63,222 nt of DNA, filler included, from Octopus bimaculoides (GCF_001194135.2; 4 parts of 3 records of this genome joined end to end with filler, not necessarily neighbours in it); one strand, 5' to 3'. Shown: positions 22,786-26,867, numbered from the whole stretch's first letter. Program-made: numbers and translations. Notes: generated by a model from the sequence alone, not told the origin.

Positions 22786-22818
22786 TATTTTCTCTTTGTT
22801 TCTTTTTTTTTTTTTCAG
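22786..22818 (+). promoter_or_regulatory. 3' splice acceptor of a 5'UTR intron of RECQL4
   Basis: ttttctctttgtttcttttttttttttttCAG (AG at 22817-22818), then 17 nt, then the ATG at 22836 in good context (gcaATGG). An in-frame TAG lies just upstream of the ATG, so upstream exon(s) would be non-coding. Confidence 0.75.
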
Positions 22819-22835
22819 ACTTGTGAGTTTTAGCA

Positions 22836-25800
22836 ATGGAAAAACTAAAGAATTTAAAGATGGCTTTAAAAACCTGGGAAGCAAATTTCTTGAAAGAAAA
22901 TGGTAGAAAACCAAACAGTGAAGACATTGGTTTATCATCAGAAAACATCCGAAGTGCTTACTCTAGGTACTATCAATTAAAGAAACAGTTAGCCAATTGC
23001 AGTGCAGACCATTCCTCTATCAAAGACGATGAAAATACTGTATGGGGTAAAGAGTTCAATCGAACCCCAGAAAATAACAGTGATGGACACAGAAATAGTT
23101 CGTCTGATGATCTGAAGGTTAAGCAAGCCATGTATTTAGAAAAACTCAGTACCAAAATGTTCATCAATTCTAAACGATGCGATGCCATGAAAAAAATTGC
23201 CAACAAGAATTTGTTACAACAAAAATCTGCAAAGAAAGAAGAGAATTCAAAAAGGGCAAAAACAAATTGCAATTTATCAGACTTGAATACATCTGAAAAT
23301 GACATATCATTAGCTTCCACCCCTGAGGAAAAAAATGTTTCTTCTTCAGAAACAGGTGTAGAAAGTTCTGGTACCAAAGTAGTTGATGATTCCAGTCCAG
23401 AAGAATCACTGCAACTAAATCATTCTGGGTTGTTTAAAAATGTTTTGAATATCTCTTCACGGAAACGAAATGTTAAAAGTGATGCAACTGATTCCTTGGT
23501 TATTCCGAGATTGATCCATGAAACCAAAAATCATAAGTTCTCTTTGTCTGCATCTATAGCTGATTACGCTGATGAGGAAATTTCCACTGATCCTGTCTTA
23601 AATAGAGATTTCAAAGATAATGTGAAGACATCTTTTGATTCTTTTCCCAATTCTCAAGATAATTCTGATTCCAAACGTGAGTCCAATGATATGCAAAATA
23701 TAGATTTTCAGCTGGATCATGTTGGTCCAGAACTTAGAACTTCTAAAGATACACAAAGAAATAACAAAGATAACAGTTTTAATAAAAATACCATTCCTGT
23801 TAAATTGGAACTGAAGAGACAGATGTCTCCTGAATCCAACAAAGCCAAACGAAGAAAGATTTCTGTGGATACTGCACTGAATACCTCTATGTCTTGCAGT
23901 AACAATGGGGAAACTACTTCTGTTAAAGACTCTGGACCTTACAGTGTTTGTGATAAGGACTGTTTTTCCAGTACTGAAATCAGTAAAGAAAAAATTCCAA
24001 GGCTCCAAGAATCTGTTGAATGTTCCAGCTCTTCTGGAACCAATGATTCCACCCTGAAACCAGTAAAATCTAGCAATACCAAGCAAACTAAAAAGACCTT
24101 TGCTGCTCCGAAAATGAGCCAAATAAACAAATCTGAAAATTTTGTTCGTTTGAATATGAAGGTGAAACGATTTAGTAAAAAGGGCCAAGGAACAAAAGGA
24201 GCCAAGTTCAAAAGGTTAGAATGGAAAAGGAAAATGAGGGCAAAACAAAAGTCATATGGAGAGAGATGTTTCCGATGTGGAGAAAATGGACACTGGGCTA
24301 AAAACTGCAAGAATGTTCCAAACTCTCAAAGAAATAAAAATATCCAGCATGAACAAACAAATGCAGAATATTCTTCATCAAGTGTTCTTGAAGAAGATTA
24401 CCTGACACTCAGCCAAGCTGTGTCTATCTCAAAAGGAGAGTCTCTTTCCAGCTGCGTGGAACAAGATGAATTAGAAATTGAGAGATCAGTTGTAAGGGAT
24501 CCATATGAAATGTTTAACAAGTTCATTGCTTATCGAAAAAGCACAGAGCCTTATTTGGTCCCAAATGATGATGGAACATTACCAGACATACCTGGTGAAG
24601 TCTATACTGCTCTACAGAAGTTTGGTTTTAGTGAGTTTAAAGATGGACAGTCACAGGCAATTATGAGAACTTTGTGTGGATTGTCAACCCTTGTCATTCT
24701 CTCTACAGGAGGCGGTAAATCGCTTTGCTACCAGTTACCTGCTTACTTGTATGGGCAACGACCGAAACATGTGGCTATTATAATTTCTCCTTTGGTGTCT
24801 TTGATGGAAGATCAGGTGGAGGGCCTGCCCATAGGAATAAATGGAGCCTGCTTGCATACTAATATGACACACAGCCAACGAGAACTCGTTATTACTTCTG
24901 TAAATTCTGGTAAAGTTCACTTCCTTCTTCTGTCCCCAGAAGCAGTCATTGGAGGTCAAAAGTCAGTTCTAACAGAGCTCAGCAAAGATGTAATGATATC
25001 ATTTGCTTGTATTGACGAAGCCCATTGTCTTTCAGAATGGTCCCATAATTTCCGTCCTTCATATTTACAAGTATGCAAAATTCTCAAGGAGAAACATGGT
25101 GTACAGTGTTTCATCGGGCTTACTGCAACTGCAACATTAGCACAAAGTAAACACATAGCACAGCAACTTGGGATAAATGATGTACAAGATGCTGTGATTA
25201 GAGGAGCTCCCATACCGAAGAATCTTGTGCTTACTGTGTCAAGGGACATCTATCGAGATGAATCTCTCATTGAGCTCCTAGAAGGGGAAAGATTTTCCAA
25301 ATGTGAATCAATCATTATTTATTGTACACGAAGAGACCAAACTGAGAAGATTGCAACATTAATAAGAACAGCTTTAAAAGATAAATCAGAACAATTTTTC
25401 AGCTCAAGAAAGGAATCAGCAAATGGTTCCAAATCAAAGAAGACACCAAAAAATGCTGCTCAGTCTATTGCAGAAAGTTATCATGCTGGACTGACAGCAT
25501 ATCAAAGAAAACGTATTCAAAAGGCTTTTATGTCTGGGAGATTGTGGATTGTTGTAGCCACTGTAGCGTTTGGCATGGGGATTGATAAATCTAATGTGCG
25601 TGGAGTGATTCATTACAATATGCCAAAAAGCTTTGAAAGTTATGTGCAAGAAATCGGTCGTGCTGGTCGAGATAGTAAACTTTCCCATTGCCATTTGTTT
25701 ATTGATAAAGAAGGACAAGATTTAGGTGAGTTAAAGAAACACATCTATGCAAATTCAATTAGTCGATTCATTGTCAAAAAATTCATTCAAAGCATCTTGA

Positions 25801-26867
25801 AACCTTGCCGATGTCTTCAGATCCATGCCAGATGTTCCGAAAACCTATGCGAACCAAATGAAAGCAACGAAGACACCAAGAAAGATTCAAACAATCTTGA
25901 TTCTTTCCTTTGTTTTAACCACGAGAAAAGAATATGTAAAGGTCATGAGGTAGCAGTCAGTATTGAACCCTTGGTTCAGAGATTAGATATAAAGGAAGAG
26001 AATATTTCCACTCTCTTCTGTTATTTAGAACTGTCATTCCCTGGACTTCTAAGACTGTTACCTTTAACATATGCAAAATGTAAGATAAACTGTTATGGAG
26101 GAGCTGTTCAGTTGCAGGGTATTGCAAAGAAATGTTCTCCGGTGGCTGTTGCTGTTGCCAAACAGAAACTTGAAGGGAAAAAATTCTGCACAGCTTCTTC
26201 AGTTGAATTTCCTGTGATTGAGCTGAGTGACAGCATGGGATGGAATTCAGGCATTGTGAAAAGAGAGTTGAAATCGTTGCAGTGGAGTTTTGACAATGAT
26301 TCAGGTGCTAAGAAGAGTGGCGTACTTGTTGAACTATCAAACCTGGCCTTCCATTTTGTATCCTTTGGTGATTTAAGTGACAACGAACTGGATCACATAA
26401 TCGACTACTTATATAACCGTGTGAAAACACAGGAGAAGATAGAGTTAGGCCAGATTCAGCGTCTACACCAAGCAGTGATGTCTGTCTCGTATAACAGTAT
26501 ATGCGGTTGCTTAGATAATGTCGATGAGAAACGGAATAAAAACTTGCACCAACTTATTTTTGAATATTTTGAGGAAGATTCTATTACTGAACCTTCTGTT
26601 GATGAACTGTCTACGTCTGAATTGTCAGCCGTCAAATATGATGTTGGTCAAATAAGAAATGACATGAGAAGGTTCCTATCAATATATTCATCTGATCACA
26701 ATTTTACTGGTCACTCAATTGCTAGAATACTCCATGGTATTGGAAGTCCTTGCTATCCAGCTAACATATGGGGCAGAGTTCGTCGGTTCTGGCGATCTTA
26801 TCTCGGTTCTGACTTCCAAACCATTGTTAATATTGCTACTGAAGAAATTATAAATTATAAGCACTAA
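22836..26867 (+). CDS. RECQL4: ATP-dependent DNA helicase Q4 (RecQ4), 1343 aa, whole CDS in one exon
   Basis: N-terminal Sld2-like segment LKTWEANFLKENGRKP...AYSRYYQLK; NFVRLNMK motif; CCHC knuckle CFRCGENGHWAKNC (24267-24308); motif I STGGGKS (from 24702); Ia SPLVSLMEDQ; II DEAH with the aromatic loop SEWSHNFRPSY (from 25014); III TATA; V VATVAFGMGID; VI QEIGRAGRD (from 25647); R4ZBD-like ligands PCRC and CKGH; C-terminal ARILHGIGSPCYPA..WG. Confidence 0.97.
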   Translation: MEKLKNLKMALKTWEANFLKENGRKPNSEDIGLSSENIRSAYSRYYQLKKQLANCSADHSSIKDDENTVWGKEFNRTPENNSDGHRNSSSDDLKVKQAMYLEKLSTKMFINSKRCDAMKKIANKNLLQQKSAKKEENSKRAKTNCNLSDLNTSENDISLASTPEEKNVSSSETGVESSGTKVVDDSSPEESLQLNHSGLFKNVLNISSRKRNVKSDATDSLVIPRLIHETKNHKFSLSASIADYADEEISTDPVLNRDFKDNVKTSFDSFPNSQDNSDSKRESNDMQNIDFQLDHVGPELRTSKDTQRNNKDNSFNKNTIPVKLELKRQMSPESNKAKRRKISVDTALNTSMSCSNNGETTSVKDSGPYSVCDKDCFSSTEISKEKIPRLQESVECSSSSGTNDSTLKPVKSSNTKQTKKTFAAPKMSQINKSENFVRLNMKVKRFSKKGQGTKGAKFKRLEWKRKMRAKQKSYGERCFRCGENGHWAKNCKNVPNSQRNKNIQHEQTNAEYSSSSVLEEDYLTLSQAVSISKGESLSSCVEQDELEIERSVVRDPYEMFNKFIAYRKSTEPYLVPNDDGTLPDIPGEVYTALQKFGFSEFKDGQSQAIMRTLCGLSTLVILSTGGGKSLCYQLPAYLYGQRPKHVAIIISPLVSLMEDQVEGLPIGINGACLHTNMTHSQRELVITSVNSGKVHFLLLSPEAVIGGQKSVLTELSKDVMISFACIDEAHCLSEWSHNFRPSYLQVCKILKEKHGVQCFIGLTATATLAQSKHIAQQLGINDVQDAVIRGAPIPKNLVLTVSRDIYRDESLIELLEGERFSKCESIIIYCTRRDQTEKIATLIRTALKDKSEQFFSSRKESANGSKSKKTPKNAAQSIAESYHAGLTAYQRKRIQKAFMSGRLWIVVATVAFGMGIDKSNVRGVIHYNMPKSFESYVQEIGRAGRDSKLSHCHLFIDKEGQDLGELKKHIYANSISRFIVKKFIQSILKPCRCLQIHARCSENLCEPNESNEDTKKDSNNLDSFLCFNHEKRICKGHEVAVSIEPLVQRLDIKEENISTLFCYLELSFPGLLRLLPLTYAKCKINCYGGAVQLQGIAKKCSPVAVAVAKQKLEGKKFCTASSVEFPVIELSDSMGWNSGIVKRELKSLQWSFDNDSGAKKSGVLVELSNLAFHFVSFGDLSDNELDHIIDYLYNRVKTQEKIELGQIQRLHQAVMSVSYNSICGCLDNVDEKRNKNLHQLIFEYFEEDSITEPSVDELSTSELSAVKYDVGQIRNDMRRFLSIYSSDHNFTGHSIARILHGIGSPCYPANIWGRVRRFWRSYLGSDFQTIVNIATEEIINYKH

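What the first reader, a model, noticed from the sequence alone, without database searches (positions are those of the whole stretch)
22786..26867. RECQL4 with a 4-kb intron-free CDS behind a 5'UTR intron: candidate functional retrogene
Seen: a 4032-nt uninterrupted ORF with all RecQ4 modules intact, in a window otherwise broken by repeats every few hundred bp, and a strong acceptor 17 nt before the ATG. Established: human RECQL4 has 21 exons; processed retrocopies lose coding introns and often recruit a promoter through a new 5'UTR exon/intron. Inference: this essential replication helicase gene may have been replaced by a retrocopy, or lost all coding introns, in this lineage. No poly-A remnant or TSD is visible, so the event would be old.
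Basis: partly seen in the sequence, partly recalled or inferred. Interest (0 to 1): 0.7.

Follow-up and report, generated by a model that had tools for sequence, protein, structure and literature searches.

The report
Cephalopod RECQL4 gene lost its coding introns
The octopus gene for the replication helicase RecQ4 really is one uninterrupted 4-kb coding exon, but this is an old state shared by every cephalopod sampled (not by bivalves, chitons or annelids), and it is more likely the original gene stripped of its introns by a cDNA copy than a relocated retrogene.

Summary
Window 22836-26867 (+) is a complete 1,343-aa RecQ4 ORF in Octopus bimaculoides, with an Sld2 domain, a CCHC zinc knuckle, a RecQ helicase core and the RecQ4-specific C-terminus. 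A pyrimidine tract plus CAG (AG at 22817-18) lies 17 nt before the ATG.

The intron-free CDS is not an assembly artefact and is not octopus-specific. It recurs in a sister Octopus species, in Argonauta hians and in two unnamed cephalopods that form the sister clade of Octopoda (probably decapodiforms). One bivalve and an annelid have many mapped coding exons, and the scallop and chiton genes span 230 and 162 kb. Four intron positions shared by the bivalve and the annelid (after octopus residues 28, ~614, 661 and 749) are precisely absent in cephalopods. The gene is under purifying selection (dN/dS 0.13 in the conserved domains).

The acceptor-like site keeps its 16-17 nt distance from the ATG in all the cephalopods. 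Similar sites sit 41-42 nt before the ATG in the bivalve and the annelid. The 5'UTR intron is therefore probably ancestral, which favours in-place cDNA-mediated intron loss over retrogene replacement. Neither synteny nor RNA evidence could be obtained, so that choice stays open. This is a new example of a known kind of event, of moderate interest.

The parts
22788..22818 (+). Pyrimidine tract (22788-22815, with one G) followed by CAG. This is the putative 3' splice site of a 5'UTR intron, with the AG at 22817-22818.
   Evidence: Sequence read. An acceptor-like motif lies at the same place in Argonauta (16 nt from the ATG), X2 (17 nt), X1 (17 nt, weaker tract) and the sister Octopus (17 nt), although the spacer sequence is not conserved. 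The motif's background frequency in the flanks is 0.0006-0.0015 per nt. No RNA evidence was available.
22819..22835 (+). The 17-nt 5'UTR part of the coding exon. It contains an in-frame TGA (22824-26). The start codon has G at -3 and G at +4.
22836..26867 (+). Complete intron-free RECQL4 (RecQ4) coding sequence, 1,343 codons plus TAA.
   Evidence: It is identical to the protein annotated on O. bimaculoides CM046624.1. dN/dS against the sister species is 0.25 overall.
22848..23105 (+). Sld2/Drc1-like N-terminal domain (aa 5-90). The ancestral phase-0 intron after codon 28 is missing here.
   Evidence: Pfam PF11719, E = 5.5e-10. In the bivalve and the annelid, exon 1 ends after codon 28 with a GT donor. 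The junction is gap-free in cephalopods.
23136..24125 (+). Low-complexity, fast-evolving linker (about aa 101-430).
   Evidence: dN/dS is 0.73 here against 0.13 in the conserved domains. The region is expanded by tandem peptide repeats in Argonauta.
24264..24314 (+). CCHC zinc knuckle (aa 477-493).
   Evidence: Pfam PF00098, E = 2.3e-5.
24645..25670 (+). RecQ helicase core (DEAD aa 604-767, Helicase_C aa 846-945). Ancestral introns at about aa 614, 661 and 749 are missing.
   Evidence: The junctions are gap-free in cephalopods.
25713..26864 (+). RecQ4-specific C-terminal region (aa ~960-1343).
   Evidence: It aligns to human RECQL4 5lst up to aa 1253. The C-terminal end is conserved in all cephalopods and in the mosquito.
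22540..22735 (+). SINE-like repeat inserted about 80 nt upstream of the acceptor, inside the putative 5'UTR intron.
   Evidence: There are three copies in the 24-kb octopus locus and none in the Argonauta, X2, bivalve or annelid loci. Homology with the sister Octopus stops at its 3' edge. An inverted partial copy lies at 19943-20041.
26868..27202 (+). 3' flank or 3'UTR, about 90% identical to the sister Octopus up to 27198. No canonical AATAAA and no A-run were seen.

Best explanation
This is the genuine, functional RECQL4 orthologue of Octopus bimaculoides. It encodes the Sld2-like replication-initiation module fused to a RecQ helicase. An ancestor of all the cephalopods sampled here, living before Octopoda split from a second (probably decapodiform) clade, lost every coding intron of this gene by precise excision. 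That pattern points to a reverse-transcribed, spliced mRNA as the template. The route I consider most likely is recombination or gene conversion of a cDNA with the gene in place. The cDNA would not have extended 5' of the start-codon exon, so only the ancestral intron in the 5'UTR survived. The gene is then expected to be transcribed from its original promoter, with a short non-coding first exon (not located) spliced to the AG at 22817-18. Shown: the gene's identity, the intron-free state in five cephalopods, multi-exon outgroups, precise absence of four ancestral introns, purifying selection, and a positionally conserved acceptor motif. Inferred: the RT-mediated mechanism, the in-place route, actual use of the acceptor, and the decapodiform identity of X1 and X2.
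For: Identity. The intron-free CDS occurs in O. bimaculoides, in an Octopus sp. at 90% nt identity that is collinear through the acceptor, in Argonauta hians (4,758 nt for 1,585 aa), in X1 and in X2 on a 348-kb genomic contig. In the tree, (X1,X2) is sister to Octopoda and Cephalopoda is monophyletic, each with 100% bootstrap. Outgroups: Sinanodonta has at least 13 coding exons over 72 kb. The chiton gene range is 162 kb with a nested gene. The Pecten range is 230 kb. Capitella is multi-exon. Intron positions shared by the bivalve and the annelid lie after octopus aa 28, ~614, 661 and 749, and none leaves an indel in cephalopods. dN/dS is 0.13 in the conserved domains. The acceptor motif sits 16-17 nt before the ATG in all cephalopods against a background of 0.0006-0.0015 per nt. 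A strict acceptor motif lies 42 nt before the Capitella ATG, and a weaker one 41 nt before the Sinanodonta ATG. This implies an ancestral 5'UTR intron, which a retrocopy of mature mRNA would have lost. The cDNA-recombination model predicts concerted loss of adjacent introns and survival of 5' introns (PMC2614967).
Against: No RNA evidence shows that the acceptor is used, and no first exon or promoter could be located. The outgroup 5'UTR introns are inferred from motifs only, and the bivalve site fails the strict criterion. The distance from the ATG differs (16-17 nt against 41-42 nt), so homology of the intron is not proven. Synteny could not be tested, because the ±10 kb flanks share only repeats. 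Loss of all 13 or more introns in place in one step is rarer in animals than loss of a few adjacent introns (general knowledge). The taxa of X1 and X2 are unnamed.
Confidence: 0.5

Rival explanations
1. Retrogene replacement (an orphaned retrogene). A processed RECQL4 mRNA, 5'-truncated just upstream of the ATG, was inserted by LINE machinery at a new locus in a stem cephalopod. It recruited a foreign promoter and non-coding first exon through a new 5'UTR intron, took over the essential function, and the multi-exon parent was then lost.
For: All coding introns are absent and were removed precisely. Only one RecQ4 per cephalopod was seen in the protein searches. LINE elements with an AP-endonuclease ORF lie next door, showing that the machinery exists in this genome. 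Single-coding-exon replacements of multi-exon essential genes are documented, for example amphioxus SYCP1 (PMC5803294). From general knowledge, functional retrogenes often acquire 5'UTR exons and introns. RecQ4 has a long stem branch in cephalopods.
Against: No A-run (poly-A remnant) is visible in the 3' flank that was read, and TSDs were not searched for; after several hundred million years neither would be expected to survive. An acceptor-like site just upstream of the ATG also exists in the annelid and the bivalve, so the intron need not be new. The model needs a truncation point within a few tens of nt of the ATG. It also needs correct S-phase regulation to be re-acquired for an essential gene. 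Relocation was not shown.
Confidence: 0.33
2. Stepwise loss. The introns were lost one or a few at a time along the long cephalopod stem lineage, by several cDNA conversions or by microhomology/NHEJ deletions, rather than in a single event.
For: The stem branch is long. RECQL4 is known for very short introns in vertebrates (general knowledge). Capitella's introns are short too, about 40-550 nt, and short introns are the class most prone to loss (PMC5716013 abstract).
Against: All five cephalopods show the same end state, with no coding intron surviving in any lineage. The molluscan outgroups have very large introns, with gene ranges of 72-230 kb, and large introns are poor substrates for deletion. 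Cephalopod genes in general remain intron-rich (general knowledge).
Confidence: 0.12
3. Artefact. The introns were collapsed, or cDNA contaminated the O. bimaculoides assembly, and the real gene is multi-exonic.
For: The scaffold has N gaps at 22478-22491 and 27203-27625, close to the gene.
Against: The same uninterrupted CDS with genomic flanks is present in three independent read sets of a sister Octopus, in the Argonauta assembly, in six X1 contigs and in a 348-kb X2 contig. O. vulgaris and O. sinensis proteins fall in the same 90% cluster. The flanks are ordinary repeat-rich genomic DNA.
Confidence: 0.01
4. There is no 5'UTR intron. This is independent of the other rivals. The pyrimidine tract plus AG would be part of a T-rich core promoter or leader, and transcription would start within a few hundred nt of the ATG.
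For: All X1 contigs (up to 847 nt upstream) and the sister-Octopus contigs are collinear with genomic sequence through the site. If any of those read sets is RNA, that would indicate unspliced transcripts. X1 has its highest CpG o/e at -450 to -550.
Against: The YnCAG keeps its position at 16-17 nt from the ATG across lineages whose surrounding sequence is unalignable. A recent SINE and microsatellites sit 80-550 nt upstream in O. bimaculoides, where a proximal promoter would be. The contigs look genomic, because the 506-nt 3' difference has no GT-AG ends and is therefore an indel polymorphism.
Confidence: 0.12

Closest known systems
Retrogene replacement / orphaned retrogenes (e.g. amphioxus SYCP1; tetrapod Sowah) - PMC5803294
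   Same: A large, anciently multi-exonic, essential gene is represented by a single coding exon of 3-4 kb. No multi-exon copy is detected. The state is shared across a clade, and non-coding 5' structure lies upstream.
   Different: For SYCP1, relocation next to the ParaHox cluster was shown. Here no relocation could be shown, and outgroups appear to carry an intron at the equivalent 5'UTR position, which argues for retention rather than recruitment.
cDNA-mediated (reverse-transcriptase) intron loss by homologous recombination - model summarised in PMC2614967
   Same: Introns were removed precisely. Adjacent introns were lost together. Only the 5'-most intron survives. The gene is expressed in proliferating and germline cells.
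   Different: Documented animal cases usually involve one to a few adjacent introns. Here every coding intron is gone (at least 13 by comparison with a bivalve) in an otherwise intron-rich lineage.
Human RECQL4 (structure 5lst) and metazoan RecQ4 orthologues
   Same: The domain order is the same: Sld2-like N-terminus, zinc knuckle, RecQ helicase core and RecQ4-specific C-terminal domain. There are no RQC or HRDC Pfam hits. E = 4e-188 to 5lst.
   Different: The linker (aa ~100-430) is lineage-specific and fast-evolving.

Membership tests
RecQ4 / RECQL4 helicase family | N-terminal Sld2/Drc1-like domain | tested here: met
   PF11719 at aa 5-90, E = 5.5e-10, 39.9 bits against a cut-off of 28.
RecQ4 / RECQL4 helicase family | RecQ-type superfamily-2 helicase core with intact motifs (GKS Walker A, DEAH, GRAGRD) | tested here: met
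   DEAD and Helicase_C hits. The motifs TGGGKSLCYQLP, DEAHC and GRAGRD are visible in the translation and invariant in alignment A1.
RecQ4 / RECQL4 helicase family | RecQ4-specific C-terminal domain instead of RQC/HRDC | tested here: met
   The alignment to human RECQL4 5lst is continuous to aa 1253, E = 4e-188. The next best matches (RecQ, WRN, RECQ5, BLM) cover only the helicase core at about 1e-56 or weaker. There is no RQC or HRDC Pfam hit.
RecQ4 / RECQL4 helicase family | Orthology: groups with RecQ4 of other animals in the expected species arrangement | tested here: met
   NJ tree of 829 columns: cephalopods monophyletic (100%), bivalves 98%. All best database hits are named ATP-dependent DNA helicase Q4.
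Processed retrogene / retrogene replacement | Lacks the introns of the parental gene, removed precisely | tested here: met
   Four ancestral positions are absent without indels, and the CDS is uninterrupted.
Processed retrogene / retrogene replacement | Lies at a locus unrelated to the ancestral gene | not testable with these tools
   Only ±10 kb of flank was available. The flanks share nothing but microsatellites and repeats between cephalopods or with outgroups. The only neighbours seen are cofilin in Argonauta, N4BP1-like in the chiton and adh_short in Capitella.
Processed retrogene / retrogene replacement | Poly-A remnant and target-site duplications | tested here: not met
   No A-run is visible in the O. 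bimaculoides 3' flank read. Flanking direct repeats (TSDs) were not searched for specifically. A-runs in the X1 3' flank are ordinary for AT-rich DNA. Absence is expected for an event this old, so it does not exclude the model.
Processed retrogene / retrogene replacement | The parent's own 5'UTR intron is also gone, so any 5' intron is new | tested here: inconclusive
   Cephalopods have an acceptor 16-17 nt before the ATG. Capitella has a strict motif at 42 nt and Sinanodonta a weaker one at 41 nt. This leans towards an inherited intron, but rests on motifs only.
Processed retrogene / retrogene replacement | The parental multi-exon copy is absent or decayed elsewhere in the genome | not testable with these tools
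   No second cephalopod RecQ4 appeared in three protein searches, but those searches demonstrably miss members: P0003 and P0004 are absent. Whole-genome TBLASTN was not possible.
In-place cDNA-mediated intron loss | Precise, concerted loss of adjacent introns with the 5'-most intron retained | tested here: met
   for the losses. for the surviving 5' acceptor, which is a conserved motif and is not confirmed by RNA.
In-place cDNA-mediated intron loss | The gene stays at the ancestral locus with its ancestral promoter and first exon | not testable with these tools
   The same limits apply as for synteny. No first exon or promoter was located.

The most novel reading that the evidence does not exclude
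RECQL4, an essential replication-initiation gene, was replaced by a 5'-truncated retrocopy at the base of the (coleoid) cephalopods. The retrocopy was wired to a new promoter through a recruited non-coding exon, and the ancestral multi-exon gene of 100 kb or more was deleted. This would be a clade-defining rare genomic change, coincident with the large-scale reorganisation of cephalopod genomes.
Probability: 0.33. Interest if true: 0.55.

Novelty: new member of a known kind. Interest (0 to 1): 0.4.

Why it matters
Losing every coding intron from a gene of about 20 exons in an intron-rich animal lineage is rare, and it leaves a clean, irreversible mark. First, it gives cephalopod phylogenetics a rare genomic change to use; its state in Nautilus and Vampyroteuthis would date it. 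Second, it shows that germline reverse transcription reshaped an essential S-phase gene early in cephalopod history, which is relevant to the known LINE activity in octopus genomes. Third, it offers a natural test of whether an essential replication factor can be re-wired to a new promoter (retrogene replacement) or simply tolerates losing all its introns. I found no paper reporting this. It does not reveal a new mechanism or a new kind of gene.

Tried and rejected
(1) I hoped the Logan contigs (L004-6, L007, L009-13) were spliced transcripts that would show the 5'UTR junction. All are collinear with genomic sequence through the acceptor, so they are uninformative about splicing.

(2) A 506-nt difference in the X1 3' flank looked like a 3'UTR intron. 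Its ends are not GT-AG on either strand, so it is an indel polymorphism.

(3) Aligning ±10 kb flanks between Octopus, Argonauta, X2, the bivalve and the annelid, by both blastn and tblastx, gave only SINE and microsatellite matches. No synteny information resulted.

(4) A scan for E2F-like motifs and CpG-rich windows to locate a promoter or first exon showed nothing consistent across species.

(5) The sister-Octopus upstream 105 nt could not be placed in the O. bimaculoides 10 kb upstream region.

(7) Look-ups for Pomacea and Saccostrea loci failed because those isoforms are not on record.

(8) The Rfam 'miRNA' hits at 22277-22536 are all far below gathering scores and lie on (CA)n/(TA)n microsatellite, so I rejected them.

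(9) My by-eye impression that the elements at 27057-27105 and 27718-27766 are tRNA-derived was not confirmed by ARAGORN.

(10) BLASTP reported only the N-terminal HSP between P0004 and P0001. This is a reporting quirk, since the full-length MAFFT alignment gives 66% identity over conserved columns.

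
Full report
**1. The observation**

The piece (window 19575-30929) contains one long ORF, 22836..26867 on the + strand, of 1,343 codons plus TAA. Pfam finds an N-terminal Drc1/Sld2 domain (aa 5-90), a CCHC zinc knuckle (477-493), DEAD (604-767) and Helicase_C (846-945). The best solved structure is human RECQL4 (5lst), E = 4e-188, aligned continuously over aa 577-1253. Other RecQ helicases match only the core, at 1e-56 or weaker.

Upstream the sequence reads ...ttctctttgtttctttttttttttttttCAG|acttgTGAgttttagca ATGG.
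- The AG is at 22817-18 and 17 nt separate it from the ATG.
- An in-frame TGA (22824-26) lies between them, so the CDS cannot extend into an upstream exon.

**2. Source, and whether this is an artefact**

The protein is on record on Octopus bimaculoides chromosome CM046624.1, GCA_001194135.2. O. vulgaris and O. sinensis RecQ4 fall in the same 90% cluster.

Three Logan contigs from another Octopus species (90% nt identity) are collinear with the window from 22736 to 27198, that is, through the pyrimidine tract, the whole CDS and the 3' flank. The intron-free CDS is therefore real genomic structure. It is neither a collapsed assembly nor cDNA contamination.

**3. How far the state extends**

- Argonauta hians RecQ4 occupies exactly 4,758 nt for 1,585 aa, so it has no intron.
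- An unnamed organism X1 (P0004; six contigs from six read sets) has an uninterrupted 1,378-codon ORF with up to 847 nt of 5' flank and 1,366 nt of 3' flank.
- A second unnamed organism X2 (P0032) carries the gene on a 348-kb genomic contig. It is collinear with X1 at 80% nt identity. It has a single 1-nt frame change at an A-run in the variable linker, most simply a homopolymer error.

In a neighbour-joining tree of 829 conserved columns, X1+X2 (100% bootstrap) are sister to Octopoda (100%), and the five sequences form a cephalopod clade (100%). Identities are 82% for Octopus-Argonauta, 66-69% for octopods-X, 87% for X1-X2 and about 54% to the scallop or chiton.

Two well-separated species forming the sister group of Octopoda are most simply decapodiforms (squid, cuttlefish). 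I could not name them.

**4. Outgroups**

| Species | Group | Gene structure |
|---|---|---|
| Sinanodonta woodiana | bivalve | at least 13 coding exons over 72 kb |
| Liolophura sinensis | chiton | gene range 162 kb, with a GPCR gene nested inside |
| Pecten maximus | scallop | gene range 230 kb |
| Capitella teleta | annelid | many exons with short introns |

Exon boundaries coincide in the bivalve and the annelid after octopus residues 28 (donors AAG|GTGGGT and AAA|GTACGT), ~614, 661 and 749. These are therefore ancestral lophotrochozoan introns.

At all four places the cephalopod proteins align without any gap. That precise excision is the signature of a spliced-RNA template.

**5. Function**

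Against the sister Octopus, dS = 0.21 and dN/dS = 0.25 overall. By region, dN/dS is 0.13 for the zinc knuckle, helicase and C-terminus, 0.27 for the Sld2 domain and 0.73 for the low-complexity linker. ORFs are intact across splits where dS is saturated. No second cephalopod RecQ4 appeared in three protein searches, although those searches are not exhaustive. This is the working RECQL4 gene.

**6. The 5'UTR acceptor**

All five cephalopod sequences have a pyrimidine tract plus YAG ending 16-17 nt before the ATG, while the spacer itself is not conserved.

A strict motif (YAG preceded by at least 9 of 11 pyrimidines) occurs at 0.0006-0.0015 per nt in the non-coding flanks. It is found at that position in Octopus, Argonauta and X2; X1 has a weaker tract. 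Chance coincidence in three independent lineages is of the order of 1e-5 or less. A real 3' splice site is therefore very likely.

No RNA evidence was available, and I could not locate the first exon. In O. bimaculoides a lineage-specific SINE (22540-22735) and microsatellites occupy the 80-550 nt upstream, which also argues against a proximal promoter.

**7. Retrogene or in-place loss?**

Both models use a reverse-transcribed spliced mRNA. A retrocopy of mature mRNA should also have lost the parent's 5'UTR intron, so the cephalopod intron would have to be new.

Capitella has a strict acceptor motif 42 nt before the ATG of its Sld2 exon. Sinanodonta has a weaker one (ttgttgtttattttgacaacag) 41 nt before its ATG. 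The near-identical spacing in an annelid and a bivalve suggests that the ancestral gene already had a 5'UTR intron just upstream of a small start-codon exon of about 41 nt of UTR plus 28 codons.

The cDNA-recombination model predicts exactly what is seen: concerted, precise loss of all downstream introns and survival of the 5'-most one (PMC2614967). In-place conversion also keeps the promoter of an essential S-phase gene.

On this basis I favour in-place loss (about 0.5) over retrogene replacement (about 0.33; concept and precedent in PMC5803294) and stepwise loss (about 0.12). The evidence is motif-based. Synteny could not be tested, because ±10 kb flanks share only repeats. From general knowledge, coleoid genomes are so rearranged that only Nautilus or linkage-group-scale comparison would be decisive.

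**8. Comparison with what is known, and novelty**

The protein is an ordinary RecQ4. The gene structure is a new example of a known kind of event, either wholesale RT-mediated intron loss or an orphaned retrogene. Full-text searches found no report of an intron-free RECQL4 or of cephalopod retrogenes of this type.

It is a useful rare genomic change for cephalopods and a good test case for the two models, but it is not a new mechanism. Interest is about 0.4.

Confidence by claim:
- About 0.9 for the general statement: functional orthologue, ancient cephalopod-wide loss of all coding introns, RNA-mediated.
- About 0.85 that the acceptor is real.
- About 0.5 for the in-place route.

Noticed in passing
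window 28288-30929 (+): A LINE-like retrotransposon lies downstream of RECQL4. T/N/K-rich ORFs (28288-29032) are followed by an ORF with a CCHC knuckle (CYLCDSETHLKKDC, 29090-29752). An ORF at 30301-30756 hits the AP-endonuclease family Exo_endo_phos (E = 6.8e-9). The element runs off the end of the piece.
   Followed up: partly
window 21465-21833 (+): A 122-aa ORF in a locally GC-richer stretch ends in a C-x2-C...H-x4-H motif and has no Pfam hit. From memory it resembles the C-terminal tail of a LINE ORF2; this was not verified. An overlapping antisense ORF lies at 21497-21811.
   Followed up: partly
window 22540-22735 (+); also 19943-20041 (-); L003 23866-24032 and 7010-7210: An Octopus-specific SINE-like repeat of about 200 nt. 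There are three copies within 24 kb and none in the Argonauta, X2, bivalve or annelid loci. One copy sits about 80 nt upstream of the RECQL4 acceptor and is absent from the sister Octopus species.
   Followed up: partly
window 27057-27105 and 27718-27766, flanking the N gap 27203-27625: An inverted pair of ~49-nt segments (80% complementary) brackets a (TA)n microsatellite and the assembly gap. By eye they look tRNA-derived (GGTTCAAATCCC), but ARAGORN finds no tRNA.
   Followed up: partly
window 19576-19902: A tandem array with a period of about 10 nt (20 or more overlapping copies) and strong strand asymmetry (GC skew -0.37, AT skew -0.55), at the edge of the piece.
   Followed up: no
window 22277-22540: (CA)n/(TA)n microsatellites with a 14-N gap (22478-22491) produce a dozen sub-threshold Rfam 'miRNA/snoRNA' hits. 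All are low-complexity artefacts.
   Followed up: yes
L004:206-229 (sister Octopus sp.): The called start of P0002 is the second Met. The true ATG, conserved with O. bimaculoides (MEKLKNLK-M), lies 24 nt upstream, so the protein is 1,339 aa, not 1,331.
   Followed up: yes
L001 (Argonauta hians) protein aa ~50-620: The Argonauta RecQ4 linker is about 240 aa longer than in Octopus. The extra length comes from tandem peptide repeats (KQSLNSS..., NGVSESFNGIKTDxPDF...), a poly-Pro run and long Ser/Thr/Ala runs. This region evolves almost neutrally (dN/dS 0.73 in Octopus).
   Followed up: partly
L009 about 5505-6011 versus L007 (X1 3' flank): A 506-nt insertion/deletion polymorphism lies about 560 nt after the stop codon. 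Three other contigs end exactly at this branch point. It has no GT-AG ends, so it is not an intron.
   Followed up: yes
L008 about 10002-10028 (X2): A single 1-nt frame change at an A-run splits RecQ4 into two overlapping ORF calls (555 and 858 aa). It is probably a homopolymer error in a long-read contig, but a real frameshift cannot be excluded.
   Followed up: partly
L014 8677-8688 (Capitella): Immediately after the putative 5'UTR acceptor there is a four-codon upstream ORF (ATG AAC TTG TGA), ahead of the RecQ4 start. The deposited Capitella model (853 aa) also lacks the Sld2 and zinc-knuckle exons, which tblastn finds at 8719-8796 and 9977-10315.
   Followed up: no
L010 about 440-455 and 618-630 (X1 upstream, -410 and -225 from the ATG): There is a CpG-containing GGCGCGGAA element (E2F-like, but not a match to TTTSSCGC) and a consensus donor TGT|GTAAGT about 205 nt upstream of the acceptor. 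Together they could define a short first exon and a ~205-nt 5'UTR intron in X1. This is speculative.
   Followed up: no
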